This document shows, in pieces, positions 30,823 to 60,295 of a stretch of 64,000 nt of DNA. The notes beneath the pieces were generated by a model. It ran no database searches and was not told where the DNA came from. It saw nothing but the letters and a program-made list of their open reading frames with translations. Position 1 is the stretch's first letter. Each line of letters starts with the position of its first letter. The translations under genes and the position numbers were made by a program. Location of the stretch: positions 240,366-304,365 of the IMG/VR virus record IMGVR_UViG_3300031857_000005. The stretch is one strand, 5' to 3'.

Positions 30823-30851
30823 TTGATTATTCCATAATTTATGTTTATATT
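30823..30851 (+). promoter_or_regulatory. Sigma70-consensus (putative middle) promoter for primase
   Basis: TTGATT-N17-TATATT. Confidence 0.5.
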
Positions 30852-30858
30852 ATAATTT

Positions 30859-31758
30859 ATGGATGAAAATGAATCTTTGGTTGAATTATTGGAGGATGTT
30901 TTGGGGGATCACGGATTACACTACCCAAATAGAGGACAAATATCCTTCAATTGCCCCGTATGTGACGACGATAGAAACAAATCCAACCTTGAGGTAAATT
31001 ATTTTACAAATGTTTATAAATGTTGGTCTTGTTCTGAAAGTGAGGGTACGCACGGATCTTTGGGTAAACTTTTTGATAAATACGGGAATAAAAAACATAA
31101 AAAATTATATAACATCCTTAAACCTGAAACTGTTCAGGTGAAAGAAAAGAAAAAACCTAAAGTCCAACTACCAAAAGAGTATAAGTTATTTAAGGATGTT
31201 AATCCAAGATATCCAATTAGACAACAAGCAATAAATTACCTATATAATCGGGGAATTTCCGATTATATGATTGAAAAATACCAAATTGGGTTCTGTGATA
31301 ATGGTAGTCATTCTGGTAGGATAATTATTCCATCTTATAGTGCAAAAGGAGAACTTAACTATTACATAGGTAGAAGTTGGGATCCGTATACTAAAGCTAA
31401 ATACCGAAATCCCGAAGCCGAGAAAGAAAAAATTATTTTTTGGGAAAATTTAATTGATTGGAACAAAGATATATACCTTGTTGAAGGTGCTTTTGACGGG
31501 ATTTTCTTAGAAAACTCAATACCAATGCTCGGAAAACATATGTCAGAATTATTGTTTGAATCAATATATAATAAAGCTAAAGGTGATATTATTATTTGTT
31601 TGGATGCTGATGCGTGGGTTAACGCAGTTAAACTTTATCACGAATTAAATGGTGGAGTTCTATGGGGTAGAATAAAAATTATCAAATTACCTGATGATAA
31701 GGATGTTTGTGATTTGAAGGGAGAAATAAATGATTATTATATTGAAATACGAGATTAA
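30859..31758 (+). CDS. DNA primase (zinc finger + TOPRIM)
   Basis: CPVC...CWSC zinc finger, RIIIP, YIGR, LVEGAFD and CLDADA motifs. Confidence 0.9.
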   Translation: MDENESLVELLEDVLGDHGLHYPNRGQISFNCPVCDDDRNKSNLEVNYFTNVYKCWSCSESEGTHGSLGKLFDKYGNKKHKKLYNILKPETVQVKEKKKPKVQLPKEYKLFKDVNPRYPIRQQAINYLYNRGISDYMIEKYQIGFCDNGSHSGRIIIPSYSAKGELNYYIGRSWDPYTKAKYRNPEAEKEKIIFWENLIDWNKDIYLVEGAFDGIFLENSIPMLGKHMSELLFESIYNKAKGDIIICLDADAWVNAVKLYHELNGGVLWGRIKIIKLPDDKDVCDLKGEINDYYIEIRD

Positions 31759-32615
31759 TGGATTTAAAAGAAATTGCAAAGGAGATAAGAGAGATTATTG
31801 AAAACAAACAAAAGGAACTACAATTAACTTTTGAGGAAGATAGTCACACATACACAATGATTGATTCATCGGGTAACTTGAGAAGTGATTGGCCGTCAGT
31901 ATCAAAAGTGATGAAGTTATTTTATACCGAATTTGACTCGGATGGAATTGCTGAAAAGAAGGCTAAAGGTGACCCTGAAGAAAAGGCTCGTTTATTGAAA
32001 GAATGGTCAGATGCGGGAACCTATTCTACAAATATGGGTTCTAGAGTCCACTTCTTTCTTGAACAAAAATCCTTAGAAATGTTTGGAATTGAAAAGGAGG
32101 TTAGACAACCAATATTTGATTGTGATTTCACACAAATATTAAAGGGAGATTCTATGATTCATGCGGGTACTGATTTTTTGGAATTGATGAAAGAAAGGGG
32201 AGCTGTATTATTGGATACTGAAATAGTATTAGGGTGTAATGAGATTGGATATGTTGGACAACCAGATAAATTTTGGTTAATAATGAATAGAGAAGGTACT
32301 GAATTTGGTTTAATTATTACCGATTGGAAGACAAACAAAAAGAAAAATTTTGAGGATAACATCTTTACCAAAAAAATGAAACCACCATTTCAAAGTTTGA
32401 GTGATAACGCCTTAGGGCACTACTTTACACAGTTACCGTTCTATTCAAAGTTAATATTGAAAATGTTAAAAGGTTCTAAGTATGAAAATACCAAATTATA
32501 TGGTGGTATTATTGTTCATTTGAGTGATGAAGGTAAGTTTGAAGAATTTAGAGTACCTAAAGAAGTTATCAATACTATTTTGAATATGGATATGTCAAAA
32601 TACTTGAAAAAATAA
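31758..32615 (+). CDS. PD-(D/E)XK exonuclease
   Basis: GSRVH, TE, GQPD, ITDWKT and QLPFY motifs. Confidence 0.8.
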   Translation: MDLKEIAKEIREIIENKQKELQLTFEEDSHTYTMIDSSGNLRSDWPSVSKVMKLFYTEFDSDGIAEKKAKGDPEEKARLLKEWSDAGTYSTNMGSRVHFFLEQKSLEMFGIEKEVRQPIFDCDFTQILKGDSMIHAGTDFLELMKERGAVLLDTEIVLGCNEIGYVGQPDKFWLIMNREGTEFGLIITDWKTNKKKNFEDNIFTKKMKPPFQSLSDNALGHYFTQLPFYSKLILKMLKGSKYENTKLYGGIIVHLSDEGKFEEFRVPKEVINTILNMDMSKYLKK

Positions 32616-32632
32616 ATTAATTTAATTATAAT
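32604..32632 (+). promoter_or_regulatory. Sigma70-consensus (putative middle) promoter
   Basis: TTGAAA-N17-TATAAT, 5 nt before ATG 32638. Confidence 0.55.
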
Positions 32633-32637
32633 TAAAT

Positions 32638-32730
32638 ATGGAAAATTCAGTGGAATTAATATGGGTATATACAACATCGTGGGATCACGAGTTACCATAT
32701 AAAATAAAAATTAATTATATTATAAAATGA
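32638..32730 (+). CDS. Small 30-aa protein (not in ORF track): MENSVELIWVYTTSWDHELPYKIKINYIIK
   Basis: Directly after a promoter; ATGA overlap with the 32727 gene. Confidence 0.55.
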   Translation: MENSVELIWVYTTSWDHELPYKIKINYIIK

Positions 32731-32978
32731 AAATTAGAATGACAAGATCATATGAAATGTGGGAATCATATGAACCAATTGAAATTAACCCAGAAGATTA
32801 TCCTGAATTGGAAGGAATGACAAATGAAGAAATCATTGATTATTTGAATGAAAATATGTATGAATTTGAAATTAAAGATGGTTCAGAAGGAAGTTTAGTT
32901 GATGAAATTCAGTTTGGACAAGAAATTATTAAAGATAAAATGGGTGATGAAACATTCACATTATATTTAGAAGATTAA
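32727..32978 (+). CDS. Hypothetical acidic protein
   Basis: 83-aa ORF in operon. Confidence 0.6.
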   Translation: MKIRMTRSYEMWESYEPIEINPEDYPELEGMTNEEIIDYLNENMYEFEIKDGSEGSLVDEIQFGQEIIKDKMGDETFTLYLED

Positions 32979-32982
32979 AACT

Positions 32983-33198
32983 ATGGAAGATAATATTATT
33001 AGACCTAAAATTGATTTAAAACAACAAGAAACCGTTGAGTGTGAAAAATGTAAATGTAAATTCTTTAAGGAGGTTGTTTTAATTAAAAAAGTGCCTAAAT
33101 TAATGACAGGAAGTTCGGAAGATACATTAGTACCATTCCCAACATATATGTGTAATGATTGTGGTCATGTGAATATTGATTTTAAATTGTTTGATTAA
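32983..33198 (+). CDS. Zinc-ribbon protein
   Basis: CEKC...CNDCGH. Confidence 0.7.
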   Translation: MEDNIIRPKIDLKQQETVECEKCKCKFFKEVVLIKKVPKLMTGSSEDTLVPFPTYMCNDCGHVNIDFKLFD

Positions 33199-33199
33199 A

Positions 33200-33430
33200 A
33201 TGACACATAGAGAATTTTATATTTGGTTAGAAGGTTATCTTGCTGGTAAACTTGAAAATAAACATATAGATATTACACCTATTGTTGAAAAAATGGGTGA
33301 AGTTATTAGTGATGAACAAAAGTGGATTGATGACTTCAAAAGATATAGAGATATTAATCCATTACCAATAAAACCGAATCCGTATAACCCACCGTATGAA
33401 ATTTATTGCGGTACAAAAGACACAGAATGA
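33200..33430 (+). CDS. Hypothetical protein
   Basis: ATG at 33200 (MTHREFYIWLEGY); ATGA-coupled to the next gene. Confidence 0.65.
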   Translation: MTHREFYIWLEGYLAGKLENKHIDITPIVEKMGEVISDEQKWIDDFKRYRDINPLPIKPNPYNPPYEIYCGTKDTE

Positions 33431-34206
33431 TAAAAAAAATAATACACTTTTCTGATTTACACATTCGTCTTTATAAAGATCATGATTTGTATAAGTCAAT
33501 AATGGAAGATGCGATTAACCAATGGAGAGAAATCAATCCTGATAGAATTGTATTCACTGGTGATTTGGTTCACTCTAAAAATCAAATGACTCCCGAACTT
33601 ATTGAAATGGTTCGGTGGTTGCTTTTGGAATGTTCATTTATTGCACCAACAATCATTATACCTGGTAATCACGATTTCCTTGTAAACAATGTTGAAAGAT
33701 TAGACGCACTTACACCAATCATTAATTCGTTAAATAATAAAAACATTTTCTATTATAGAGATAGAGGTGTGTATGAAGATGAGAATATTAGTTGGTGTGT
33801 GTACTCGCAATATCAAGGGAATATTCCTCCTGATTTGAATGTTGCAACAGGAATAAAAGTGGGATTGTTTCACGGACCAATTCAAGGAATGAAAACCGAT
33901 TTGGGATTTGACTTTGGAGAGGAGGCGTATGATGTTGAAAAGTTCAATGGACTTGATGTTGTATTATGTGGTGATATCCATAAAAGACAAGAATTTAACT
34001 TTAAAACGGGTAAAGGTTATATGATAGGTAGCCCAATACAACAAAATATTGGTGAAAGTATTGGTAGACATGGATATGGAGTTTATAATTTAGAAACAAA
34101 AGAATATAACTATACGGACTTATTCAACCCCAAGCCATTTTTAAAGTTTGAAATTAAATCATTTGAGGATATTGAAAATGGAACCGAATTACTCAAAAAT
34201 CTTTAA
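33427..34206 (+). CDS. Mre11/SbcD/gp47-like metallophosphoesterase nuclease
   Basis: SDLH, TGDLVH, PGNHD, FHG and GDIH motifs; start set by ATGA overlap. Confidence 0.9.
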   Translation: MIKKIIHFSDLHIRLYKDHDLYKSIMEDAINQWREINPDRIVFTGDLVHSKNQMTPELIEMVRWLLLECSFIAPTIIIPGNHDFLVNNVERLDALTPIINSLNNKNIFYYRDRGVYEDENISWCVYSQYQGNIPPDLNVATGIKVGLFHGPIQGMKTDLGFDFGEEAYDVEKFNGLDVVLCGDIHKRQEFNFKTGKGYMIGSPIQQNIGESIGRHGYGVYNLETKEYNYTDLFNPKPFLKFEIKSFEDIENGTELLKNL

Positions 34207-34945
34207 TAAAAAAACAATGCAGACAGTGTCTGCATTTTGTGAATTAAACAAAATTGACGATATAGATAAATTCATCAAAAAATGTTTTACTGATGGATTT
34301 AATATTGAAAAATACGGACTTTTGGGAGAAACACTTAATGAAGGTGAAAAAGACTTAAAAACGGATGTTGTTGAGGAAAAACAATTAATAAAAGAAGTGA
34401 TTGTTGAAAAACGGGTGGAAGTTCCTATTGAGGTTATCAAAGAGGTGGAGAAAATAGTTGAGGTGGTTAGAGAAGTACCCATTGAAATTATTAAGGAAGT
34501 CCCTGTTGAAAAAGTTGTCACAAAAATAGAATATATTAGTGACAAGTCTAGTGAGAACGAATTAACGGAAAAAATTTTCCACTTAAATGAGGAATTAGAA
34601 AAAGAAAGACAAAAATTTTCCACTAAAACCGAAGAAATGGAAAATTTTTTCCAAAATGAAATGTCTAAAAAGGATGAAGAATTAGACGAACTTAGACATA
34701 ATTTAGACGAACTTTTAGACAAACCTCCTGTTGAAATTATCAAGGAGGTAGAGGTAATTAAAGAAGTTGAAAATAATGAAAAGTTAAAAATGATGGGAGA
34801 AACTTTACAGAAACTTAGAAAAGAACTATCATTAAAAGACAAAAAAATTGAAGAATTAGAAGAAATAAATAAACAATTAGAATCTATGAAGGTAAGCCAA
34901 GGTGCTGTATACCTCAAAGGTTCAAACTTAACACGAAGATTATGA
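34178..34945 (+). CDS. Coiled-coil protein with VEVPIEVIKEV repeats
   Basis: Repeated E(V/I)IKEV / VPVEKVV units followed by a coiled coil. Confidence 0.7.
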   Translation: MEPNYSKIFNKKTMQTVSAFCELNKIDDIDKFIKKCFTDGFNIEKYGLLGETLNEGEKDLKTDVVEEKQLIKEVIVEKRVEVPIEVIKEVEKIVEVVREVPIEIIKEVPVEKVVTKIEYISDKSSENELTEKIFHLNEELEKERQKFSTKTEEMENFFQNEMSKKDEELDELRHNLDELLDKPPVEIIKEVEVIKEVENNEKLKMMGETLQKLRKELSLKDKKIEELEEINKQLESMKVSQGAVYLKGSNLTRRL

Positions 34946-35295
34946 TGATATTAATTTGGTTATTAGCGGCATATGGAATGTCAAATATATTGGTTTACGG
35001 ATCAATATTTCAAGGAATAAGAGATTGGTTTAAAAACACAGGTAATAGTGGAATACCAGTAATAAGTGACTTCTTTAAGTTCATATCTGATTTAGTGTCC
35101 TGCATGATGTGTACATCAACTTGGGTAGGATTTTTTATGTCATTGGTTGCGTATTCACCTTGGCATGAAATTATAGGATTAAATCAGTACGCATCTATAT
35201 TTTTTGATGGTATGTTAGCATCAGGATTTGTATGGGCGTTTAATGGTATAGTAGAATGGTTTGAAGAAAATCGACCTAATAATAATGTTTTATAA
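34942..35295 (+). CDS. Membrane protein with CxxC (DUF1360-like)
   Basis: Hydrophobic helices; IFQGIRDW and LVSCMMCTSTWVG. Confidence 0.65.
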   Translation: MMILIWLLAAYGMSNILVYGSIFQGIRDWFKNTGNSGIPVISDFFKFISDLVSCMMCTSTWVGFFMSLVAYSPWHEIIGLNQYASIFFDGMLASGFVWAFNGIVEWFEENRPNNNVL

Positions 35296-35305
35296 ATAAG
35301 TAAAA

Positions 35306-35584: not shown

Positions 35585-35587
35585 TAA

Positions 35588-37968: not shown

Positions 37969-37997
37969 ATGACTAAGTGGATTTTTATTCTTATATT
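37969..37997 (+). promoter_or_regulatory. Sigma70-consensus promoter for the candidate R-M pair
   Basis: ATGACT-N17-TATATT. Confidence 0.45.
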
Positions 37998-38705: not shown

Positions 38706-39613
38706 ATGAAGTAATTTTAGGTAATGCGATTGAAGTATTACAAAGATATGAGGATAATACATTTGATTTAACTGTAACATCACCACCGTATGATAACTTA
38801 AGAACTTATAATGGAAAAATTAAGGATGAGGTTGTCTTTGAAGATGGATTTAGTTTCCCATTTGTGGAAATGGCTCGTGAGTTATATAGAGTAACCAAGA
38901 AGGGTGGTGTTGTTATTTGGGTGGTAAATGATCAAGTAAAAAATGGTGGAGAAACTGGTAGTTCATTCAGACAAGCACTTAAATTTAAGGAGATTGGATT
39001 TACATTGTACGATACGATGATTTATCATAAGAATGGAGCCCCATTTCCTGAAACAGGTAGATACTCACAAGTATTTGAATATATGTTCGTCCTTTCAAAA
39101 GGGAAACCAAAAACGGTTAATCTATTAAAAGATAAACCAAATAGATGGGCGGGACATAGTAATTTTGGTGATCCATCAAAAAGAGAAAAAGACGGAAACC
39201 TTAAAAAGGTTGACAAGTTTGTTGTATCTGAATTCGGTACAAGGTATAATGTATGGTATGTTAATAATGGTAAAGGGTTCTCATCCAAAGACGACATTGC
39301 ATTCCAACATCCTGCAATATTTCCGGAATCATTGGCTGAGGATCATATTCTATCTTGGAGTAATGAAGGTGATATAGTATTAGATCCTATGTGTGGTAGT
39401 GGAACGACATTGAAGATGGCGAAACTTAATAACAGGAATTATTTGGGTATTGACATCAATGAAGAATATGTCGATTTATCAAATCTAAGAATACAAAATA
39501 TTGAACCATACACTAATGAAACACCTAATCCAAAGGTTAAATTCCTTTTATCTAAAGAAGATGCTTTATTGAAAAGAAAAAATAATAAAGAATCTAAAAA
39601 TTTGTTGGATTAA
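38702..39613 (+). CDS. DNA methyltransferase, N4/N6 family beta class (SPPY, probably N4-cytosine)
   Basis: TSPPY, then HPAIFP and VLDPMCGSGTT. Confidence 0.92.
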   Translation: MNEVILGNAIEVLQRYEDNTFDLTVTSPPYDNLRTYNGKIKDEVVFEDGFSFPFVEMARELYRVTKKGGVVIWVVNDQVKNGGETGSSFRQALKFKEIGFTLYDTMIYHKNGAPFPETGRYSQVFEYMFVLSKGKPKTVNLLKDKPNRWAGHSNFGDPSKREKDGNLKKVDKFVVSEFGTRYNVWYVNNGKGFSSKDDIAFQHPAIFPESLAEDHILSWSNEGDIVLDPMCGSGTTLKMAKLNNRNYLGIDINEEYVDLSNLRIQNIEPYTNETPNPKVKFLLSKEDALLKRKNNKESKNLLD

Positions 39614-39631
39614 TAATTATTTGTATATTTG
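39601..39631 (+). promoter_or_regulatory. Bacteroidota-type (host sigma, early) promoter
   Basis: TTTG-N19-TATATTTG upstream of 39645 and the sigma gene. Confidence 0.7.
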
Positions 39632-39644: not shown

Positions 39645-40181
39645 ATGAGATATCTAATGTTTGTGTACGGTGAAAGTGAAACTATGGATAGTGAAGCCTT
39701 AACCACTAAAATTGGTAAAGAAATCCAACCCATTGTAATTTCAGAACAGATAAAATACATTTATGGTGATGGTAACGCAATTTTTCATTTTGAATCTGAG
39801 TTAAAATATGAAGAAATGTCTATGTATGTTGAGATGGTTTTTGAAGAATTAGAAGACATTATGTTTACCTTAATACCATTTAATGGTAAGATGGCAACAA
39901 ATATGGGTAAGGATAGAAAAAATCACCTATTGTCTATTGATGAGGAGGATAAGATTGAGATTAATACTTTCACTGTTAGTTCTGAAGATATTAGTAATGA
40001 TGGTGCGATTTTTGATATGTTTATGGATATGATTAATCAAGGTAGTCCATTTATTATCAATAAAACAAATGAAGATGTGTGTAATATGTCATTGGACGAA
40101 CTTTTAGATAAAATCAATGACAAGGGAATAAATTCACTCACAAAGGCGGAGAAATTAAAATTGGAACAATACTCAAAATAA
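39645..40181 (+). CDS. Hypothetical protein with a C-terminal DUF6576-like motif
   Basis: LDELLDKINDKGINSLTKAEK; ATG start at 39645. Confidence 0.6.
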   Translation: MRYLMFVYGESETMDSEALTTKIGKEIQPIVISEQIKYIYGDGNAIFHFESELKYEEMSMYVEMVFEELEDIMFTLIPFNGKMATNMGKDRKNHLLSIDEEDKIEINTFTVSSEDISNDGAIFDMFMDMINQGSPFIINKTNEDVCNMSLDELLDKINDKGINSLTKAEKLKLEQYSK

Positions 40182-40186: not shown

Positions 40187-40987
40187 ATGAAGGAAAAAGG
40201 AACAGGAATGCCCATTAATCAGGATGAAATCTCTCACTACCTAAAGGATATTAGGAAGATTAAAGTTATGACACCTGAAAGGGAAAAAGAATTATCTAAA
40301 CTTATGATGTCGGATACTTTAACTGACAAACAACGAAAACAAGTTGAACAGGAGTTGTTAACAGGTAATTTACGATTTGTTATTACCGTTGCAAAACAAT
40401 ATCAAAATCAAGGTTTGGATTTTCCTGATTTGGTTGCTGAGGGTAACTTAGGGTTATTGAAAGCAATTAAAAACTTTGATTGGAGTAAAAATTTGAGATT
40501 TATTTCATATGCCGTTTGGTGGGTTAAACAATCTATTATTCAGTCTTTAAATGACAATGCGAGAACAATTAGACTTCCTGTAAATGTTGTTCAGGAACTT
40601 CATAAAGCTAAAAAAGAAATTGAGAATAATGGAGGAAAACTATCGGATAAATTCTCATCTTTACCATCAATGATTGACTTAGATATGAATATCAATGATG
40701 AGGGAGATACATTCCTTGATATGATACCAAATATGGATGCAGACGCTCCTGATGCGGCTTTTAATACTGCGGACATTCTTAAAGAAAAATTAATCAATAC
40801 ACTTAGTGTTTTAGATGAAAGAGAACGAGTAATTATTGAGGATTATTTTGGACTTAGTGGAACACCAAGAACTTTGGAAGATATTGGAGGTGATTTTGGT
40901 TTAACTAAAGAACGAGTAAGACAGATTAAAGAAAGAGCTTTGAGAAGGTTACGAAATGAGAGTTCTGAATTATTTGATTATATCTAA
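40187..40987 (+). CDS. RNA polymerase sigma70 factor, Bacteroidota primary-sigma-like (no region 1.1)
   Basis: NLRFVITVAKQYQNQGL, EGNLGL, FISYAVWW, RTIRLP, TLEDIG...TKERVRQIKE. Confidence 0.93.
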   Translation: MKEKGTGMPINQDEISHYLKDIRKIKVMTPEREKELSKLMMSDTLTDKQRKQVEQELLTGNLRFVITVAKQYQNQGLDFPDLVAEGNLGLLKAIKNFDWSKNLRFISYAVWWVKQSIIQSLNDNARTIRLPVNVVQELHKAKKEIENNGGKLSDKFSSLPSMIDLDMNINDEGDTFLDMIPNMDADAPDAAFNTADILKEKLINTLSVLDERERVIIEDYFGLSGTPRTLEDIGGDFGLTKERVRQIKERALRRLRNESSELFDYI

Positions 40988-41007: not shown

Positions 41008-41038
41008 TTTGGTGGTTTAAAAAAGATCATTACATTTG
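41008..41038 (+). promoter_or_regulatory. Bacteroidota-type (early) promoter
   Basis: TTTG-N19-TACATTTG. Confidence 0.75.
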
Positions 41039-41061: not shown

Positions 41062-41508
41062 ATGACAAACGACATCATCAAAGTAAACGAAGGAACATTA
41101 TCAGGAGACGTATTCTACGGATCATTCAACACCACAGTAAAAGGTAAAAGAATTTCAGTTTCGGTTTCAAACCACCTTAAAGATGCGGACAAAGAATACG
41201 AATTCCGTATCGCAAATAAATGTCAGGCAGGATTCATCAATATCCACGACACTAAAGGAACTGCGGCGAGTGTTATTCGTGGATACCAAAAAAACTCATT
41301 GGTTAATATCCAAGCAAAAAATGAGTACGGACAGTGGATGAATGTTTACACAATTAAAGGTGGTAAGTGGTACTCAATCGACAAAGGGTTCTTGGATGTG
41401 TTAACTGTTGGGACAATGAGAGAGTCATTCCCTGATATGTGTGACATGGAACTTTGGGGTAGAATGGGAGCAAAAACTTGGGCAGACAAATCATTTAAAC
41501 AAAACTAA
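41062..41508 (+). CDS. Hypothetical early protein
   Basis: ATG 41062 lies downstream of a host-type promoter; C-ending codon bias. Confidence 0.7.
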   Translation: MTNDIIKVNEGTLSGDVFYGSFNTTVKGKRISVSVSNHLKDADKEYEFRIANKCQAGFINIHDTKGTAASVIRGYQKNSLVNIQAKNEYGQWMNVYTIKGGKWYSIDKGFLDVLTVGTMRESFPDMCDMELWGRMGAKTWADKSFKQN

Positions 41509-42085: not shown

Positions 42086-42093
42086 TATTTATT
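42086..42093 (+). promoter_or_regulatory. Putative late promoter (TATTTATT) for the membrane/lysis cluster
   Basis: Recurrent motif immediately after a terminator. Confidence 0.55.
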
Positions 42094-46104: not shown

Positions 46105-46129
46105 CGATATTTATTATAAAAACACAATT

Positions 46130-48231: not shown

Positions 48232-48232
48232 T

Positions 48233-51551: not shown

Positions 51552-51581
51552 AAGAAACCCCACCTTTTTAGAGATGGGGTT
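51552..51581 (-). terminator. Intrinsic terminator closing the small transcript
   Basis: AACCCCATCT...AGGTGGGGTT followed by TCTT on the minus strand. Confidence 0.75.
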
Positions 51582-51707
51582 ACAATTATTTCATTCCTAA
51601 AATTGAGGTAATCAACCCAGACCGATTCACCCAGTCATTAGCGGTCAGTTTGTTTAATAGGATTCTGACAACCTGTTGATAATATTGATTACTCAACCAC
51701 ATCAACA
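51552..51707 (-). ncRNA. Candidate structured small RNA (about 150 nt); alternatively a near-leaderless 38-aa ORF at 51586-51702
   Basis: Has its own host-type promoter and terminator; GNRA-capped 5' hairpin; long-range helix enclosing two stems. Confidence 0.5.
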
Positions 51708-51710
51708 ATA

Positions 51711-51741
51711 CAAAGATAGTGAAGTTTTTGGTTCTGCCAAA
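51711..51741 (-). promoter_or_regulatory. Bacteroidota-type (early) promoter with an overlapping inverted repeat
   Basis: TTTG-N19-TATCTTTG on the minus strand; AAGTTTTTGG-ttctg-CCAAAACTT at 51722-51745. Confidence 0.75.
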
Positions 51742-51773: not shown

Positions 51774-51802
51774 TTGACTGATTATCATAAATATCTTATA
51801 CT
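51774..51802 (+). promoter_or_regulatory. Sigma70-consensus promoter for the Dam-like MTase
   Basis: TTGACT-N17-TATACT, 6 nt before the ATG. Confidence 0.65.
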
Positions 51803-52648: not shown

Positions 52649-52697
52649 TTAATTTATTCATTTTTATTTATCGTAATATTTATAGTAAAAACATCAA

Positions 52698-54866: not shown

Positions 54867-54897
54867 TTTGGCAATTACAAATTAATTACTATCTTTG
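54867..54897 (+). promoter_or_regulatory. Bacteroidota-type (early) promoter
   Basis: TTTG-N19-TATCTTTG. Confidence 0.75.
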
Positions 54898-54921
54898 TGA
54901 TGTAATTAAAACCAAAACATT

Positions 54922-55677
54922 ATGATTTATACACCAGAACTTATCAAATCCGTAGCCCCTTCAGTATTCGCAACATCAGCATCAAGCAAGTTGTCTGACA
55001 AGTATGTCTTTGTACCAACCGATCAAGTCATTGAATTTTTCGATCGTGAAGGTTGGGAAATTTCAGATGTTAAACAAACAGGTAAAGGAATTCACGCAAC
55101 CCATCAAATTAGATTCCGTAATGGAGAACTTCCTTCAGTTGGAGACACATTGGTTGAAGCAATTGTTCGTAACTCACACAATGGTATGTCAACATTCTCA
55201 GTCAGTGCTGGACTTCACCGATTGGTATGTTCTAACGGACTTACAGTACCTACATCAGTTGCCGACAAATTTAATGTTAGACACAGTGGGTTTGAACTTG
55301 ACGATGTGAAACGATTGATGGACGGTTTTGCAAAGAAACTACCAACAATCCAAGGATCTGTTGGACGAATGATGGAACGAGAACTTACCATTGACGAACA
55401 AATTCAATATGTTCAGAAAGCGTCAAAAATCCGATGGGCTGAAGGATCAATCCCAACTGACAACCAACTTGTTGACATCCTTACACCAAATCGTGTGGAA
55501 GATAGTAATAACGACTTGTGGACAACCTTCAATGTAGTACAAGAGAAGTTTGTACGAGGAGGGTTTGACTACCGAACTAAAACAGGACGAAAGTCAAAAC
55601 TACGAGATCTTAAAAGTATCTTGGCGGTAAACAACATCAACACAAAACTTTGGGAACTTGCCGAAGAAATGATTTAA
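54922..55677 (+). CDS. DUF932/DUF945-family protein
   Basis: APSVFA, SDKYVFVPT, NSHNG, RLVCSNGL, DLWTTFNVVQE, NTKLWELA. Confidence 0.85.
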   Translation: MIYTPELIKSVAPSVFATSASSKLSDKYVFVPTDQVIEFFDREGWEISDVKQTGKGIHATHQIRFRNGELPSVGDTLVEAIVRNSHNGMSTFSVSAGLHRLVCSNGLTVPTSVADKFNVRHSGFELDDVKRLMDGFAKKLPTIQGSVGRMMERELTIDEQIQYVQKASKIRWAEGSIPTDNQLVDILTPNRVEDSNNDLWTTFNVVQEKFVRGGFDYRTKTGRKSKLRDLKSILAVNNINTKLWELAEEMI

Positions 55678-55684
55678 AAACAAC

Positions 55685-55707
55685 GGAGGGTTAATCACCC
55701 TCCTTTT
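55685..55707 (+). terminator. Intrinsic terminator
   Basis: GGAGGGT-taatc-ACCCTCC followed by TTTT. Confidence 0.8.
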
Positions 55708-55712
55708 CTATT

Positions 55713-56054: not shown

Positions 56055-56055
56055 A

Positions 56056-56370
56056 ATGGAAATTACAGGAAATCAATTACAAGAAAAAATAAATAATGGT
56101 GAGAAAGTAATCGTTGAATTATGGGCAACTTGGTGTGGACCCTGCAAAATGATGAAACCAATTTTTGAAAGAGTTGCAACTGAAAATACTACTAATGTAC
56201 AGATGTATACGATGGATGTTGATCAAAACAGAGAAGTTGCAATGGCATTAGGGGTTAGGAGCGTACCGACAATTAAAGTATTTAATGGTGGGAATGTAAC
56301 TAACACAAGAGTTGGGGTTCTCCAAGAAAATGAAATAAAAGGTTTAGTTCAAGAATTAATCAATGGATAA
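56056..56370 (+). CDS. trxA: Thioredoxin
   Basis: WATWCGPCK; VRSVPT. Confidence 0.93.
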   Translation: MEITGNQLQEKINNGEKVIVELWATWCGPCKMMKPIFERVATENTTNVQMYTMDVDQNREVAMALGVRSVPTIKVFNGGNVTNTRVGVLQENEIKGLVQELING

Positions 56371-56647
56371 GGTAGTAGTATTATTCACAATGGAAGGATG
56401 TCCTTTTTGTGTTGAGATGAAAGATATGTTAGTTAAAGAAGGGATTGATTTTGTTGATCGCGACATTGACGAATATGAAGAGGAATATAATATGTTTGTT
56501 GAGATAACAGAGAATGAATTTGTTCCGGCATTTATGTTAATTGAAAATCCTGAGACAGAACCGATTAGTCAATTATTTGCACCTGATAGAGATTATCAAG
56601 ATTTAGAAGACGGTGTCAAGATAATTAGAGAATGGATTGAGAAATAA
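56363..56647 (+). CDS. Glutaredoxin/NrdH-like redoxin
   Basis: GCPFC; FVPAF. Confidence 0.8.
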   Translation: MDKVVVLFTMEGCPFCVEMKDMLVKEGIDFVDRDIDEYEEEYNMFVEITENEFVPAFMLIENPETEPISQLFAPDRDYQDLEDGVKIIREWIEK

Positions 56648-56652
56648 AAAAT

Positions 56653-56681
56653 AAACCCCACCTTTTAGGATGGGGTTTTTT
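56653..56681. terminator. Bidirectional terminator between convergent genes
   Basis: AAACCCCA...TGGGGTTT with flanking A and T runs. Confidence 0.8.
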
Positions 56682-56682
56682 G

Positions 56683-57381
56683 TTAGAATAGAATTATATG
56701 TTCTAATAAATCTTGTTTAAGGTACGGTTTTTCACCATCAGGATTCAGGACATCATCAATTAAATTATAATCCGACAAACGCTCTCTAAATGAGTCCATA
56801 TTAAAATCAAATACATCAAGAATAAGTGACTTAATTGATTTCTTGTCAATTTTTGAGTCGGATATAATTTTAATTTTTAAATCTTCATTATTATCTTCCT
56901 CAGTGGTGAAATAAAATGATACTTCATTGACACCTAATAAATTAAACATATGGTTCATTATGTAATGTGAGTAATATGTGTTTAACCTTCCACAATCTAA
57001 ACTATAACCATATGGGAATTCTGATGAAATTGATATTTCTGAAATATCAGGTTCAGGTTCCTCAACAAAAATATCTTTCTTTACCATAACCCAACCCTTA
57101 TGAATTGTGTTTATATCCTGATTATATCTAACAACATCAATGGTATTAATATCTGACATTTCCAGCTCCTTCAGGGTATCACCAAAAGATTCCTTGAACT
57201 CATTTTTAATTTCGTTTATGTCTAAATACTCATTTGATGTTGTTAAACCATTAACAACCATAAATGCACCACAATCTGTGACTTGGATAATTGATTTTTC
57301 TGTTTTGTTGATTTTTGAGAGAATAAAGTCGGCAAATAAATTTACGATTCCTCTTTTTGAATTTTTGTTAATTAATCTCAT
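56683..57381 (-). CDS. Degenerate S-adenosylmethionine synthetase (MetK)-like protein: N- and C-domains only, catalytic motifs lost
   Basis: By-eye alignment to the MetK N-domain, the DRSAAY helix and the C-terminal FD..PW.K.D motif (see findings). Confidence 0.6.
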   Translation of the reverse strand: MRLINKNSKRGIVNLFADFILSKINKTEKSIIQVTDCGAFMVVNGLTTSNEYLDINEIKNEFKESFGDTLKELEMSDINTIDVVRYNQDINTIHKGWVMVKKDIFVEEPEPDISEISISSEFPYGYSLDCGRLNTYYSHYIMNHMFNLLGVNEVSFYFTTEEDNNEDLKIKIISDSKIDKKSIKSLILDVFDFNMDSFRERLSDYNLIDDVLNPDGEKPYLKQDLLEHIILF

Positions 57382-57433
57382 AACTATTAAATTTTTATAA
57401 TGTGTATGAAATTAAAACAACATTATAAATAGT

Positions 57434-58450
57434 TTAGTAATAAAGACGATCAGGTAACCCGTCATTGATATTCTCAACAACTTTTCTATTATCTGGATAG
57501 TCAGGAACCCTGATTCTTAAAAAATCATCACTATCGCCCATGTAATGGCGTAACATTGATGAGTAATCACCATATTCAAATAAAGTATCCTCATATCCAG
57601 CAAATGAATTTAAAAAATTCTCAATATCACTTTTAATGTTTTTAATTTTAATATAAGGTATATATACGGTTTTTAAACCGTTTTTGTTTTCAACCCAACT
57701 GTGCTTACCCTCAAAGTAAGTTGATAACTCATCAAATACCTCCGAGTACACTTCATCATTATATGCCTGATTGTAAGCCTCATCACCCAACCAACGAAAA
57801 CTATTCATCAAATCATTTAAATCACCTTTAAATAATGAATTCATAGAGTCCTCATCCTCAACAACAGACATCACATTTGATTCAGTAATGATAAATCTAC
57901 CATCGTCATCCGACATATCTCTAAACAATTCACTTTTATAATCATCTAAAGATAATTCTTGATTACCAACCAATTCTAAAACTCTCTCGGCTAATAATTT
58001 CATATTCTTTTCGTTAAGTTCTTCAACAATATCTTTATAAACATCGTAAACGGTATCACTATAAGGTTCCCACCAATCCTCATCTAAAACATTTTTTACA
58101 ATATCTCTATCGTTATATTCTCTTGAATACTGGTTGTCCTTAAAAAAATCGGATAACTCAGATAAGTCACTCAACATTAAATAATAACCATCACCACGAA
58201 TTTCAACATCACTTAAAAAACCCTGAACAATCTCGTTTAGATATGAAGGATCGTTTTGTAGGCGATATAACATCAACTCATTTACAAACCGTTCATCTTC
58301 GTAGTGTATACTATCTAAATCAAAATAATTTAAAAATCCTGCGCGTTTTACATAGGAATAAAATCTTTTTACATCACCTCCGAATACATCAGAGATATCA
58401 TCCCATTCACCATTATTGAATTTATTTACTAAATCTAAAACTTTTGACAT
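57434..58450 (-). CDS. Highly acidic late protein
   Basis: 338 aa, D/E-rich; TATTTATA lies 3 nt before the ATG (58454-58461, minus strand). Confidence 0.7.
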   Translation of the reverse strand: MSKVLDLVNKFNNGEWDDISDVFGGDVKRFYSYVKRAGFLNYFDLDSIHYEDERFVNELMLYRLQNDPSYLNEIVQGFLSDVEIRGDGYYLMLSDLSELSDFFKDNQYSREYNDRDIVKNVLDEDWWEPYSDTVYDVYKDIVEELNEKNMKLLAERVLELVGNQELSLDDYKSELFRDMSDDDGRFIITESNVMSVVEDEDSMNSLFKGDLNDLMNSFRWLGDEAYNQAYNDEVYSEVFDELSTYFEGKHSWVENKNGLKTVYIPYIKIKNIKSDIENFLNSFAGYEDTLFEYGDYSSMLRHYMGDSDDFLRIRVPDYPDNRKVVENINDGLPDRLYY

Positions 58451-58462
58451 ACCTATAAATAT

Positions 58463-58491
58463 AAAAAAAGGTGGAAACTTCCGTAACCACC
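58463..58491 (-). terminator. Intrinsic terminator
   Basis: GGTGG-TT-AC-GGAA-GT-TT-CCACC followed by T7 on the minus strand. Confidence 0.6.
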
Positions 58492-58516
58492 CATTAATTT
58501 CTTTGGTAGAAATAAA

Positions 58517-58663
58517 TTACCTCTTGTTATAATACTTCTCAACGATTTTTTTAACTGACTCTTGAACAGTGGCATTTTTTACTTGCTGTGGCTGTCCTTG
58601 AGCCGGTGCTTGTTGAGTAGCGGGAGTTCCACCATTGTTCTTATTTTTGCATCCACACCCCAT
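58517..58663 (-). CDS. Small 48-aa MGCGC peptide (not in ORF track)
   Basis: MGCGCKNKNNGGTPATQQAPAQGQPQQVKNATVQESVKKIVEKYYNKR; has its own late motif (58694-58701) and terminator. Confidence 0.7.
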   Translation of the reverse strand: MGCGCKNKNNGGTPATQQAPAQGQPQQVKNATVQESVKKIVEKYYNKR

Positions 58664-58693
58664 AGCTGATTGTTTTTATTAGGTTTATTTTCT

Positions 58694-58753
58694 TATAAAT
58701 ATCTTAATAGAATGTATTTTGTAAATAATTTTGGTATATCAATAATATTTATA
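58694..58753. promoter_or_regulatory. Divergent pair of late motifs
   Basis: TATTTATA on the minus strand (58694-58701) and on the plus strand (58746-58753). Confidence 0.6.
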
Positions 58754-58757
58754 AAAT

Positions 58758-60266
58758 ATGAAAAAAGTAATTAGACTTACCGAATCAGATTTAATTAAAA
58801 TAATTAAAACTAAACTCAACGAAGAAGAATCTGAATTTATTGAAATTCCCGCAAATGAATATGAACAGTTATTATCTGTAACTGGATATAATGGTGCGGC
58901 TCTTGAAAAGACAAGAAGGTTTAGAGGTAAGAAAATAAAAGTAAACGGTAGGTTAGATATATCAGGTAAACCAGTTACAAATCTTGGAACAATATATCTA
59001 CAAGGATCATTAGAGGCAACTAGATCAAAGTTAGAAACTTTAAATGGTGTGACAATTACGGGGTCTAAATGGTACTATAATACACCATTGGAGTCTAAAG
59101 AAAAGATAAGGAAACGAAGAAAAGAATTGGATGATGCCCAAGAAAGAAGAGAAAATGGTGTGTGGGACTTAGATTATCCGAACATTGATGATGAGGGATT
59201 AAAAGCAAATGCTGCGTTTCAGTACCTTGTTGAAAATGGTGAGATAGAAGAAATAACATCAGAAGAAAAAAGAGAATTAAAAAATTTAGAACAAAGACAA
59301 CTTAATATTTCTGATAGAATGGAAGCGGAAAATGATGAGGAACTTTTATCTGAATTGCAAAGTGAATACGATGAATTACAAGAAGACATTGATGATTTAT
59401 TAAGAAAGGAAAATAATGATGTTTATGGATTGATACCCAAAAGTTTTGGACATTATAATATGTTATCTTTTATGACAACATATGATGATTTTAATGATGT
59501 GACAATTGCCGTTGGAACCGAATATGAAGCGGATGAATCAAAAAAAGAATGGGTTGAACAATTATTGGATGATGGAGGATATAGACACTTTAATCAATAT
59601 ACGGTTGAAAGACATATTGATGGTGATGAGGTTGCCGACTATTTTGAAGATGTTATTAGAGAATGGATATATGATGATCCTGATAATTATGACGTTGTAA
59701 AAGATTTAAGTAGAAGTCAAAAAGATGAACTTTGGGTTCTTAAAATGGAGAAATGGGTTTATGAAAATGAAGGAGTCAGGTTTCCAATAAAGTACCCAAC
59801 AAAAGAAGAAAATGGAACTGTATTTGATTTTTGGGATGAAGATGAAGAACACGAATTTCAATTAAAATATGAAGGAAATAAGTGGGTATTATATAAAGAC
59901 GGATCGATAGTTCAACCAGGTCAACTATATGATGATGAAGACACTGACGATCACCAAGATGATCGTGAAAGTAGAATTTCTGATATTGAATATGAAATAC
60001 AAGAAATTGAAGAAAATCCTGATGGTGATTTGGATGAAGATTCGGTTGAAGAAAGGGTTGAAGATAAAAAATACGAAATTTCTAATGACCCTATAAGTTG
60101 GTTGAGAAATTACGACATGGATGTTGATAATTTTATTGATGAAAAGGCATTTATTGAAGATGTTGCTGGTGATGAGGATTATGGTATTTTGAATGGTTAC
60201 GACTCAACATATGATATTATTAATTTGGGTAACCAAAGTTATGTTGTAATGATAACCGATAAATAA
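58758..60266 (+). CDS. Highly acidic late protein with an MKKVIRLTESDL leader
   Basis: N-terminal MKKVIRLTESDLIKIIK...LNE; very D/E-rich body. Confidence 0.7.
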   Translation: MKKVIRLTESDLIKIIKTKLNEEESEFIEIPANEYEQLLSVTGYNGAALEKTRRFRGKKIKVNGRLDISGKPVTNLGTIYLQGSLEATRSKLETLNGVTITGSKWYYNTPLESKEKIRKRRKELDDAQERRENGVWDLDYPNIDDEGLKANAAFQYLVENGEIEEITSEEKRELKNLEQRQLNISDRMEAENDEELLSELQSEYDELQEDIDDLLRKENNDVYGLIPKSFGHYNMLSFMTTYDDFNDVTIAVGTEYEADESKKEWVEQLLDDGGYRHFNQYTVERHIDGDEVADYFEDVIREWIYDDPDNYDVVKDLSRSQKDELWVLKMEKWVYENEGVRFPIKYPTKEENGTVFDFWDEDEEHEFQLKYEGNKWVLYKDGSIVQPGQLYDDEDTDDHQDDRESRISDIEYEIQEIEENPDGDLDEDSVEERVEDKKYEISNDPISWLRNYDMDVDNFIDEKAFIEDVAGDEDYGILNGYDSTYDIINLGNQSYVVMITDK

Positions 60267-60295
60267 TTTACAGATGACAAAACCTTTATTATACT
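60267..60295 (+). promoter_or_regulatory. Sigma70-consensus promoter
   Basis: TTTACA-N17-TATACT, 7 nt before ATG 60303. Confidence 0.6.

What the first reader, a model, noticed from the sequence alone, without database searches (positions are those of the whole stretch)
30823..60295. Bacteroidota-derived phage sigma may have switched to E. coli-type -35/-10 promoters
Seen: two further promoter classes. Host-type TTTG-N19-TAnnTTTG occurs at 39601, 41008, 54867 and 51741 (minus); the 39601 copy drives the operon containing the sigma gene. Canonical sigma70-type hexamers with an exact 17-nt spacer precede replication and modification genes: TTGATT/TATATT (30823), TTGAAA/TATAAT (32604), ATGACT/TATATT (37969), TTGACT/TATACT (51774), TTTACA/TATACT (60267). 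Known: Bacteroidota primary sigma uses -33/-7 elements, not TTGACA/TATAAT. The phage sigma (40187-40987) resembles that host sigma but differs in region 2.4-3 (VKQSIIQSLNDNARTIRLP). Inference: an early, middle, late cascade in which a captured host sigma reads an orthogonal promoter set, which could also be useful for Bacteroidota engineering.
Basis: partly seen in the sequence, partly recalled or inferred. Interest (0 to 1): 0.65.

Follow-up and report, generated by a model that had tools for sequence, protein, structure and literature searches.

The report
Sigma70-like promoters in a Bacteroidota phage
A 304-kb freshwater jumbo phage that apparently infects Bacteroidota has three conserved promoter types, and its E. 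coli-like TTGACA-17-TATAAT type, which sits before the replication genes, is most likely read by the phage's own sigma factor, though no experiment has tested this.

Summary
All nine sites are at the stated coordinates. Across the whole 304,365-bp phage genome, TTGACA-N17-TATAAT sites (at most 2 mismatches) occur 15 times in gene-upstream DNA, against 3.6 +/- 1.8 in shuffles, and only at a spacer of exactly 17. A diverged 321-kb relative gives 14 against 3.7. A 400-kb Flavobacteriaceae chromosome shows no enrichment (4 against 5.5).

These sites precede the genes for DNA polymerase B, gp32, DnaB helicase, SNF2 helicase, primase, a gp46/47-like nuclease operon and Dam methylase. In relatives the two boxes are kept while the spacer drifts; for gp32 this holds in 58 of 60 distinct sequences.

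Host-type TTTG-N19/20-TAnnTTTG promoters are also real (10 against about 0.16). One precedes the DUF6576-like/sigma operon in all 53 distinct relatives.

The dominant class is TATTTAT(A), which has no -35 box. It lies before baseplate and other large genes. A second, very divergent sigma-like protein (its best structural match is T4 gp55) is a candidate reader.

A three-step cascade (host sigma, then phage sigma, then a gp55-like factor) fits the data. Assigning the phage sigma to the sigma70-like class remains an inference. The sigma is not a recent capture from Bacteroidota: it belongs to an old viral clade and is at most about 42% identical to any cellular sigma.

The parts
40187..40987 (+). 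Phage sigma factor (266 aa, P0001). It is compact and group-1/2-like: regions 1.2, 2, 3.0 and 4 are present, and about 20 aa of region 3.1 are deleted.
   Evidence: Pfam PF00140, PF04542 and PF04545. PHROG 351, sigma factor. Only the sigma-70 superfamily cut-off is passed in NCBIfam. Deletion and residues. Relatives of 75-100% identity were confirmed at 381 places in IMG/VR.
39645..40181 (+). Upstream partner gene with a DUF6576-like C-terminus. It ends 5 nt before the sigma gene, so the two are probably co-transcribed.
   Evidence: Pfam DUF6576, E = 2e-11. Syntenic with the sigma gene in 77 of 80 related loci. ATG at 39645.
39601..39631 (+). Class A (Bacteroidota host-type) promoter of the sigma operon: TTTG-N19-TATATTTG.
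   Evidence: A -7 box of the form TA(T)(A/C)TTTG is present upstream of the operon in all 53 distinct related sequences, while the flanks diverge.
41008..41038 (+). Class A promoter, TTTG-N19-TACATTTG, before the gene that follows sigma (probable start at 41062).
   Evidence: Exact pattern match. The gene is found only in 8 close relatives, so conservation could not be tested.
54867..54897 (+). Class A promoter, TTTG-N19-TATCTTTG, before the DUF932 gene (54922-55677).
51552..51741 (-). Class A promoter (51741-51711, TTTG-N19-TATCTTTG), followed by about 130 nt without a long ORF and then an intrinsic terminator hairpin (51579-51552). This is a candidate short early transcript.
   Evidence: The -33 part (GTTTTGGCA) recurs in many relatives. 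No Rfam match. Folding is unremarkable, z = -0.76.
30823..30851 (+). Class B (sigma70-like) promoter, TTGATT-N17-TATATT, 7 nt before the primase ATG (30859). The spacing predicts a leaderless mRNA.
   Evidence: About 30 relatives keep TTGAyw-N17-TATAyT-N6-8-ATG. A few have TATCTTTG or TATATTTG as the -10 box. Primase domain.
30812..30821 (+). Conserved element ACTTGTGAAG next to the primase -35 box. Role unknown; possibly an operator.
   Evidence: Kept in most relatives. It is the only intergenic exact copy in both G000 and G002.
32604..32632 (+). Class B promoter, TTGAAA-N17-TATAAT. Its -35 box overlaps the last codons of the exonuclease gene. The ATG of a 30-aa ORF lies 5 nt downstream, and genes for a gp47-like phosphoesterase and a gp46/SbcC-like protein follow.
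   Evidence: 31 of 38 distinct relatives keep TTGA(C/A)(A/T)-N17-TAnnnT. Gene content.
51774..51802 (+). Class B promoter, TTGACT-N17-TATACT, 6 nt before the Dam methylase ATG (51809).
   Evidence: Orthologues keep TTGAnn-N17, but the -10 box varies among TATACT, TATAAT, TATATT, TATATTTG and TATTTTTG. Dam: Pfam D12 methylase.
60267..60295 (+). Class B promoter, TTTACA-N17-TATACT, 7 nt before the ATG at 60303 (263-aa protein of unknown function).
   Evidence: All 6 distinct orthologous sequences keep TTTAC(A/T)-N17-TATAnT while the spacer varies.
37969..37997 (+). Claimed sigma70-type site, ATGACT-N17-TATATT. Unverified.
   Evidence: Three mismatches in all. Sites of this quality are common by chance (43 observed against 29 expected). 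The downstream gene is found only in near-identical relatives.
18755..18761 (+). One example of the class C motif TATTTAT(A), which has no -35 box. Other copies in the window: 837-843, 3203-3209, 24638-24644, 26268-26274, 42086-42092, 46108-46114, 52677-52683 and 58746-58752.
   Evidence: 82 sense copies against 16.6 +/- 4.3 in shuffles. Distance to the start codon peaks at 4-5 nt and 14-15 nt. The motif precedes the operon that holds a baseplate wedge gene. Coordinates.

Best explanation
The window is the right end of a roughly 304-kb T4-like jumbo phage. It belongs to a very abundant, uncultured freshwater clade that infects Bacteroidota, probably Flavobacteriia, and is probably the 'moraphage' lineage or close kin.

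No RNA polymerase beta or beta' subunit domain was detected, so the phage presumably reprograms the host core enzyme in three steps:

1. Host sigma-A reads class A promoters (tTTG-N19/20-TAnnTTTG). These precede small early genes and the DUF6576-like/sigma operon.
2. The phage's compact sigma (P0001) then directs the core enzyme to class B promoters, TTGAC(A/T)-N17-TATA(A/C/T)T. These precede the replication, recombination and DNA-methylation genes.
3. A second, very divergent gp55-like sigma (248 aa, genome 152654-153400, minus strand, outside the window) reads the dominant class C promoters, which lack a -35 box (aTATTTATa...AAA) and include those before virion genes.

Shown: the three classes exist, they are conserved, they map to gene functions as stated, class B is absent from a host-type chromosome, and the sigma operon is driven by class A.

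Inferred: which factor reads which class, and the timing.
For: - Class B is enriched only at spacer 17, in two diverged genomes. It is not enriched in 400 kb of a Flavobacteriaceae chromosome, where TAnnTTTG is enriched (75 against 26).
- A published transcription-start map of Flavobacterium psychrophilum assigns about 93% of starts to TAnnTTTG variants and reports no sigma70-like class (PMC9723704).
- Class B genes form a coherent set: DNA polymerase B, SNF2 helicase, gp32, DnaB helicase, primase, Dam methylase and a gp46/47-like operon.
- Conservation in relatives: for gp32, 58 of 60 distinct sequences keep TTGAC(A/T)-N17-TATA(A/C/T)T over unrelated spacers and none has TTTG.
- Classes A and B differ at the -35 box. 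The fourth base is A in 1 of 13 class A sites and in 28 of 40 class B sites (Fisher p = 1.8e-4). All 28 full sigma-operon promoters in relatives have TTG followed by T or G.
- P0001 is the only phage protein with canonical sigma regions 2 and 4. It keeps the residues that, by my alignment to E. coli numbering, correspond to Glu585, Arg588 and Gln589 of the -35 helix, and it has a clade-specific Lys at the Arg584 position.
- No RNA polymerase beta or beta' domain was found, in agreement with the moraphage paper.
- The 248-aa ORF: every top structural match is a sigma factor. The best is T4 gp55 (Z = 11.0). Sigma-2 domains match at Z about 10 with rmsd 2.3-2.7 A over 91-97 residues. There is a weak Pfam region-2 match.
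- Class C resembles T4 late promoters, which are a -10-only box (from my own knowledge).
Against: - There are no transcript or biochemical data.
- The -10-reading part of P0001 looks like that of Bacteroidota sigma-A, not like a canonical sigma. Host sigma-A already carries the canonical -35 recognition residues. So no residue explains why host sigma-A should fail on class B, or why P0001 should prefer TATAAT.
- Orthologous Dam, primase and 60303 promoters switch between TATAnT and TAnnTTTG boxes while keeping a TTGAnn -35 box. The two classes are therefore interconvertible, and a hybrid could be read by either factor.
- The sigma-like nature of the 248-aa ORF rests on a model of moderate confidence (pLDDT 72) and on Z values in a range where helical proteins can match by chance. 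hhalign gave only 1.7% probability.
- The host control is a representative Flavobacteriaceae genome, not the true host.
Confidence: 0.55

Rival explanations
1. Host sigma-A alone reads class B. A consensus -35 box (TTGACA) compensates for the missing TTTG of the -7 box, so class B is only a host-dependent variant. P0001 then reads something else, for example the abundant class C motif.
For: - Bacteroidota sigma-A has the same -35 recognition residues as canonical sigmas (LTRERVRQIKEK).
- Class A with N20 spacing has the same geometry as TTGnnn-N17-TAnnTT.
- Orthologous promoters switch between TATAnT and TAnnTTTG.
- Class C has no proven reader.
Against: - A Flavobacteriaceae chromosome shows no enrichment of class B, and a published Flavobacterium map has no such class.
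- Published work describes a unique Bacteroides promoter consensus, recognised by the core RNA polymerase with its own unusual primary sigma, and finds E. coli genetic tools of very limited use there (PMC4942465, citing Bayley 2000 and Vingadassalom 2005).
- Class C has no -35 box, whereas P0001 keeps an intact region 4.
- A gp55-like candidate exists for class C.
Confidence: 0.2
2. P0001 is a surrogate housekeeping sigma with broad, overlapping specificity. It reads both class A and class B, and takes over after the phage disables host sigma-A. The orthogonality would then lie in resistance to an anti-sigma factor, not in promoter sequence.
For: - Region 2.3-2.4 is Bacteroidota-like.
- Hybrid promoters (TTGACA with TAnnTTTG) exist in relatives.
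- A conserved co-transcribed partner gene of unknown function lies just upstream.
- Region 3.1 is deleted and region 4.2 has a Lys at the position corresponding to E. coli Arg584. These could be surface changes.
Against: - No anti-sigma factor has been identified.
- The clear split at the -35 box, and the split by gene function between classes A and B, suggest separate regulation.
- The idea does not explain why replication promoters avoid TTTG.
Confidence: 0.15
3. The sigma70-like hexamers are chance products of AT-rich intergenic DNA.
For: The genome is 30% G+C. Across the whole genome, 387 sites with at most 2 mismatches occur at spacers 16-18, mostly inside genes. Site 37969 taken alone is not significant.
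Against: - Spacer-specific enrichment on the sense strand in two genomes.
- Conservation of the boxes over diverged spacers in dozens of relatives.
- A coherent set of downstream gene functions.
Confidence: 0.02

Closest known systems
Bacillus phage SPO1 sigma cascade (gp28 for middle genes, gp33/34 for late genes); from my own knowledge
   Same: Host sigma-A transcribes the early genes, including a phage sigma. That sigma redirects the host core enzyme to middle (replication) promoters, and a further phage factor reads late promoters. The phage has no RNA polymerase of its own.
   Different: - Here the middle-class promoter is the canonical bacterial consensus, while the host consensus is the odd one.
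- The phage sigma is a compact group-1/2-like protein with regions 1.2 to 4, not a small divergent sigma.
- Nothing has been shown experimentally.
T4 gp55 late sigma and TATAAATA late promoters (PDB 7d7c)
   Same: - The 248-aa ORF has a sigma-2-like fold, and gp55 is its best match (Z = 11.0).
- Class C is an 8-9-nt A/T box without a -35 element, placed before virion genes.
- The phage has T4-like genes: gp32, gp46/47-like, baseplate wedge.
   Different: - No sequence family match in Pfam, PHROGs or NCBIfam.
- The motif is TATTTATA, not TATAAATA.
- The ORF is longer than gp55 and has a C-terminal helical domain.
- I did not look for gp33 or a clamp dependence.
Bacteroidota primary sigma (sigma-AB) and its -33 TTTG / -7 TAnnTTTG promoters (Bayley 2000 and Vingadassalom 2005 as cited in PMC4942465; PMC9723704)
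   Same: - Class A promoters match this consensus and spacing.
- P0001 shares the FISYAVWW..QSI.Q signature.
- P0001 is short (266 aa against about 287 aa), and its alignment to other sigmas begins at region 1.2.
   Different: - P0001 lies outside the Bacteroidota sigma-A clade and is at most about 42% identical.
- It has a region 3.1 deletion, a 6-aa insert after region 1.2, and Lys at the position corresponding to E. coli Arg584.
Moraphages: freshwater jumbo phages of Bacteroidota (Perez-Hernandez et al. 2025, PMC12619734)
   Same: Genome of about 300 kb, freshwater metagenome origin, predicted Bacteroidota/Flavobacteriia hosts, a sigma factor and DNA polymerase B among the core genes, no RNA polymerase genes, and glutamine synthetase and DnaJ present.
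   Different: - I infer membership of this genome in that lineage from shared traits; I did not test it against their genomes.
- The paper reports no promoter analysis and does not say what the sigma reads.

Membership tests
Sigma-70 family, group 1/2-like (RpoD/RpoS-like) | Region 2 (core binding and -10 recognition) | tested here: met
   PF04542, E = 5e-17, residues 59-127. The aromatic YxxWW motif and the Gln that corresponds, by my alignment, to E. coli Gln437 are kept.
Sigma-70 family, group 1/2-like (RpoD/RpoS-like) | Region 4 helix-turn-helix (-35 recognition) | tested here: met
   PF04545, E = 2e-15, residues 206-257. The helix reads LTKERVRQIKE.
Sigma-70 family, group 1/2-like (RpoD/RpoS-like) | Region 1.2 | tested here: met
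   PF00140, E = 1.9e-5, 25.0 bits against a cut-off of 22.
Sigma-70 family, group 1/2-like (RpoD/RpoS-like) | Full region 3 (3.0 to 3.2) | tested here: inconclusive
   No Pfam region 3 match. Region 3.0 aligns, but about 20 residues of region 3.1 are missing compared with cellular sigmas.
Sigma-70 family, group 1/2-like (RpoD/RpoS-like) | Scores above the curated cut-off of an RpoD or RpoS equivalog model | tested here: not met
   Best scores are 181 bits against a cut-off of 379 (RpoS) and 178 against 572 (RpoD). Only the sigma-70 superfamily model is passed.
Sigma-70 family, group 1/2-like (RpoD/RpoS-like) | Binds core RNA polymerase and directs promoter-specific initiation | not testable with these tools
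   Needs biochemistry or reporter assays.
Bacteroidota primary sigma (sigma-AB), as a recent capture | Nested within the Bacteroidota sigma-A clade | tested here: not met
   The compact phage and metagenome sigmas form a separate clade (SH-aLRT 96 and 94), outside the FCB and Bacillota clades. Second sigma-A copies in Flavobacteriaceae are host duplicates, not kin of the phage sigma.
Bacteroidota primary sigma (sigma-AB), as a recent capture | Signature residues of region 2.3-2.4 | tested here: met
   FISYAVWWVKQSIIQ in the phage, FISYAVWWIRQSILQ in Bacteroidota, FSTYATWWIRQAITR in Bacillota.
Bacteroidota sigma-A promoters (-33 TTTG / -7 TAnnTTTG) | Both boxes present, 19-20 nt apart, upstream of a gene | tested here: met
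   Sites 39601, 41008, 54867 and 51741(-). Across the genome: 10 against about 0.16 expected.
Bacteroidota sigma-A promoters (-33 TTTG / -7 TAnnTTTG) | Kept by selection in relatives | tested here: met
   The -7 box is present upstream of the sigma operon in 53 of 53 distinct relatives.
Bacteroidota sigma-A promoters (-33 TTTG / -7 TAnnTTTG) | Mapped transcription start about 5 nt after the G of the -7 box | not testable with these tools
   No RNA data were available.
Canonical sigma70-type promoters (TTGACA-17-TATAAT) | Two hexamers near consensus with a 17 +/- 1 nt spacer | tested here: met
   The spacer is strictly 17.
Canonical sigma70-type promoters (TTGACA-17-TATAAT) | Excess over chance and conservation in relatives | tested here: met
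   15 against 3.6 and 14 against 3.7. Conservation data.
Canonical sigma70-type promoters (TTGACA-17-TATAAT) | Initiation by a defined holoenzyme | not testable with these tools
   Which sigma reads these promoters is inferred only.
T4 gp55-type late sigma (248-aa ORF, genome 152654-153400, minus strand) | Sigma-2-like fold | tested here: met
   VIA-align: gp55 (7d7c_F) Z = 11.0; SigB, sigma-E and sigma-70 region 2 at Z 9.8-10.8 with rmsd 2.3-2.7 A over 91-97 residues. All 50 top rows are sigma factors or phage sigma-like RNA polymerase subunits. Caveat: the model has pLDDT 72, and helical folds reach such Z values more easily.
T4 gp55-type late sigma (248-aa ORF, genome 152654-153400, minus strand) | Sequence membership in a known sigma or gp55 family | tested here: not met
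   No match in PHROGs or NCBIfam. Pfam region 2 scores only E = 0.099. hhalign probability is 1.7%.

The most novel reading that the evidence does not exclude
The compact phage sigma is by itself enough to make Bacteroidota core RNA polymerase use E. coli-type TTGACA-N17-TATAAT promoters that host sigma-A ignores. That would be a natural orthogonal sigma/promoter pair for Bacteroidota. It is carried by hundreds of freshwater jumbo-phage genomes and forms the middle tier of a cascade with two phage sigmas.
Probability: 0.45. Interest if true: 0.75.

Novelty: new variant of a known kind. Interest (0 to 1): 0.62.

Why it matters
Bacteroidota are well known for not using the standard bacterial promoter, and this limits the genetic tools available for them. 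Here a very abundant, uncultured clade of their jumbo phages keeps near-consensus standard promoters, under clear selection, before its replication genes. It also encodes its own compact sigma, and no such promoters are enriched in a host-type chromosome.

If the sigma reads these promoters, three things follow:
- It shows how a phage without its own polymerase separates its middle genes from host transcription.
- It offers a ready-made orthogonal expression switch for Flavobacteria and Bacteroides.
- It gives a natural pair of related sigmas for working out which residues set the TAnnTTTG versus TATAAT preference.

The result also gives the 'moraphage'-type lineage its first regulatory map: three promoter classes, two sigma-like factors and many apparently leaderless genes.

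Tried and rejected
- Megablast of 20 kb against cultured-phage records found no match. tblastn with gp32 found only distant cyanophage hits. So there is no cultured relative and no transcriptome to borrow.
- Pfam searches for RNA polymerase beta and beta' domains in the whole genome found nothing.
- I tested whether a second sigma-A copy in Flavobacteriaceae is the source of the phage sigma or a host reader of class B. Those copies are recent duplicates of host sigma-A, 76-79% identical to it, and are not related to the phage clade.
- I tested whether the conserved ACTTGTGAAG element is a shared part of class B promoters. It is unique to the primase promoter.
- hhalign of the 248-aa family against the sigma alignment gave 1.7% probability, although the aligned stretch is region 2.2-2.3. 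The sigma-like call therefore rests on structure.
- Rfam found no match in the window or in the insertion after the sigma gene in relatives. Folding of the candidate short transcript was not significant.
- The listing of cluster members gave no taxonomy for the cellular-length homologues; the scan of named genome contigs replaced it.
- No intergenic promoter could be found directly upstream of the gp55-like gene. In both G000 and G002 it sits inside a tight leftward operon.
- My first two shuffle scripts failed or timed out. Only onward is used.

Full report
**What the window is.** The 64-kb window is the right end (240366-304365) of a 304,365-bp IMG/VR virus record that CheckV rates as 100% complete. 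The genome has 30-33% G+C. It carries T4-like genes: a baseplate wedge gene, gp32, DNA polymerase B, a DnaB-like helicase, primase, a gp47-like phosphoesterase, a gp46/SbcC-like protein and two DNA methylases. It also carries DnaJ and a glutamine synthetase. No RNA polymerase beta or beta' domain was found. The sigma protein has relatives of 75-100% identity confirmed at 381 places in IMG/VR, on contigs up to about 322 kb. There is no cultured relative. These traits match the recently described 'moraphages': freshwater jumbo phages up to 307 kb, with predicted Bacteroidota/Flavobacteriia hosts, a sigma factor among the core genes, no RNA polymerase, and glutamine synthetase and DnaJ/K (PMC12619734). 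That paper contains no promoter analysis. I infer membership in that lineage from shared traits and did not test it.

**Checking the observation.** To ask whether this exceeds chance, I called genes across the whole genome and took 187 upstream segments (14,125 nt). I compared them with 300 dinucleotide-preserving shuffles and with the antisense strand. TTGACA-Nx-TATAAT sites with at most 2 mismatches number 15 at x = 17, against 3 antisense and 3.6 +/- 1.8 in shuffles; no shuffle reaches 15. Most other spacers from 12 to 22 are near background. Spacer 16 gives 7 and spacer 22 gives 9, against about 3 to 3.5 in shuffles; I cannot explain the spacer-22 excess. The Bacteroidota pattern TTTG-N19/20-TAnnTTTG occurs 2 + 8 times against 0.08 each. 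A third motif, TATTTAT, occurs 82 times against 16.6. All three results repeat in a complete, diverged relative (G002, 321,403 bp, with terminal repeats, sigma 78% identical): 14 against 3.7, 5 + 3 against about 0.07, and 94 against 17.7. As a control I ran the same test on 400 kb of an Aequorivita (Flavobacteriaceae) chromosome. TAnnTTTG is enriched there (75 against 26.3), but the sigma70-type pattern is not (4 against 5.5 at spacer 17), and neither is TATTTAT (23 against 18.9). So the sigma70-like class is real and belongs to the phage.

**Conservation in relatives.**
- Sigma operon: a TA(T)(A/C)TTTG box lies upstream of the DUF6576-like/sigma operon in all 53 distinct related sequences, although the flanks have diverged.
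- Primase: about 30 relatives keep ACTTGTGAAG-TTGAyw-N17-TATAyT-N6-8-ATG.
- Site 32604: kept in 31 of 38 distinct relatives.
- Site 60267: kept in 6 of 6.
- gp32 (outside the window): 58 of 60 distinct sequences read TTGAC(A/T)-N17-TATA(A/C/T)T over unrelated spacers, and none has TTTG after the -10 box.
- Dam: the -35 box stays TTGAnn, but the -10 box varies among TATACT, TATAAT, TATATT, TATATTTG and TATTTTTG.
- Site 37969: cannot be supported. Its -35 is poor, sites of that quality are common by chance, and its gene occurs only in near-identical genomes.

**Two classes or one?** With N20 spacing, the host pattern has the same geometry as TTGnnn-N17-TAnnTT. The minimal anchor TTG-N20-TAnnnT peaks sharply at that spacing (53 against about 15 at neighbouring spacings). 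Within these sites, those with TAnnTTTG have T or G after TTG, and an A in only 1 of 13. Those without TTTG mostly read TTGA(C/T)(A/T), with an A in 28 of 40 (Fisher p = 1.8e-4). All 28 full sigma-operon promoters in relatives read TTG followed by T or G, whereas all gp32 promoters read TTGAC. The classes also differ by gene function. Class A lies before small ORFs, mostly between 10 and 83 kb of the genome, and before the sigma operon. Class B lies before DNA polymerase B, SNF2 helicase, gp32, DnaB helicase, primase, the gp46/47-like operon, Dam methylase and a nitroreductase. Class C is everywhere else, including before the largest genes and the baseplate operon. The hybrid promoters seen among Dam orthologues show that the boundary can be crossed in evolution.

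**The sigma.** P0001 has regions 1.2, 2 and 4, but it reaches only the sigma-70 superfamily cut-off in NCBIfam. Compared with cellular sigmas it lacks about 20 residues of region 3.1 and has a 6-residue insert after region 1.2. Among named genomes, the best matches are mostly Bacteroidota at 38-42% identity, against 35-38% for other phyla. In two maximum-likelihood trees, the compact 250-270-aa sigmas from phages and metagenomes form their own long-branched clade (support 96 and 94). This clade lies outside both the Bacteroidota/FCB sigma-A clade and the Bacillota-type clade. With only three groups and no root, the trees cannot show a Bacteroidota origin, and they exclude a recent capture. At the residue level, region 2.3-2.4 follows the Bacteroidota pattern and not the canonical one. 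The -35 helix is identical in Bacteroidota and canonical sigmas; by my alignment to E. coli numbering, the phage clade differs there only by Lys at the Arg584 position. From my own knowledge, Arg584 reads position -31. The protein sequence therefore neither demonstrates nor excludes a change of specificity.

**A second sigma-like factor.** A Pfam scan of the genome gave a weak region-2 match in a 248-aa ORF at 152654-153400 on the minus strand, outside the window. The ORF is 75-92% conserved in the clade. An AlphaFold model (pLDDT 72) matches almost only sigma factors. The best match is T4 gp55 (Z = 11.0). Sigma-2 domains match at Z about 10, with rmsd 2.3-2.7 A over 91-97 residues. The profile comparison was weak. 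This protein is a reasonable candidate reader of class C, which has no -35 box, by analogy with T4 late promoters. It lies in a long leftward operon. An upstream gene of that operon has a one-mismatch class B promoter, but that promoter is 17 kb away, so the link is only a hint.

**Most likely mechanism and rivals.** My best reading, at confidence 0.55, is a cascade. Host sigma-A reads class A, which includes the phage sigma operon. P0001 reads class B, the replication genes. The gp55-like factor reads class C. The main rival (0.2) is that host sigma-A reads class B because a consensus -35 box makes up for the missing TTTG, and P0001 reads something else. A second rival (0.15) is that P0001 is a broad surrogate sigma that reads both A and B after host sigma-A is neutralised. 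Chance is excluded. In the best reading and in the second rival P0001 reads class B, so I put that single claim at about 0.65-0.7.

**Known or new.** Phage sigma cascades are classical (SPO1, T4), and the sigma gene of this lineage has been noted as a core gene. What is new is the regulatory map, together with the inversion it implies: in a host phylum with a deviant promoter consensus, the phage keeps the canonical bacterial consensus as its private class. I rate this a new variant of a known kind, with interest 0.62.

Noticed in passing
G000 152654-153400 (-), outside the window (locus L003:1108-1854:-): A second, very divergent sigma-like protein (248 aa), conserved at 75-92% identity in the clade. 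It has no family match, but its model matches sigma-2 domains, with T4 gp55 as the best match. It is a candidate late sigma for the TATTTATA promoters.
   Followed up: partly
window 30812-30821: The element ACTTGTGAAG lies next to the primase -35 box. It is conserved in most relatives and is the only intergenic exact copy in two genomes. It may be an operator or a site linked to replication.
   Followed up: partly
window 51552-51741 (-): A host-type promoter is followed by about 130 nt without a long ORF and then a strong terminator hairpin. This is a candidate short early RNA, divergent from the Dam promoter. There is no Rfam match and folding is not significant.
   Followed up: partly
whole genome; in the window at 30851/30859, 32632/32638, 51802/51809, 60295/60303, 837-843/849 and 58746-58752/58758: In many promoters of all three classes the start codon falls where transcription should begin: 4 nt after TAnnTTTG, 5-8 nt after the class B -10 box, and 4-5 nt after TATTTAT. 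This predicts many leaderless mRNAs, whereas Flavobacterium psychrophilum is reported to have 5.5%. Class C has a second preferred distance of 14-15 nt.
   Followed up: partly
G000 about 232090-232119 (upstream of gp32, locus L192) and loci L274-L353: The gp32 5' leader holds a conserved (G/A)TAAAC(T/C)TTTAAT element in nearly all relatives, downstream of the promoter. It may be a translational operator like the one through which T4 gp32 regulates itself.
   Followed up: no
loci L023, L024, L026, L032, L039, L050 and others, directly after the sigma stop codon (about 10800-10950): Several relatives carry a conserved G+C-rich insertion starting GGGTTGAACCGAGATTACCC after the sigma gene, where this phage has a different gene. 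It looks like a structured RNA or a mobile element. No Rfam match.
   Followed up: partly
window 39645-40181: A gene with a DUF6576-like C-terminus ends 5 nt before the sigma gene and is probably co-transcribed with it. It is syntenic with sigma in 77 of 80 relatives and could be a functional partner (an anti-sigma or a helper). Binding was not tested.
   Followed up: no
upstream regions genome-wide (for example after GGGGTTTTTT hairpins): Class C boxes often lie directly after intrinsic terminators (GGGGTTTT is enriched about 19-fold in upstream DNA). This gives a terminator-then-promoter arrangement between genes.
   Followed up: no
genomes G006 (C2:235257-236045) and G007 (C16:25967-26752): Aequorivita and Mesoflavibacter each carry a second sigma-A copy of about 288 aa, 76-79% identical to the primary one. 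These are lineage-specific duplicates of the housekeeping sigma.
   Followed up: partly
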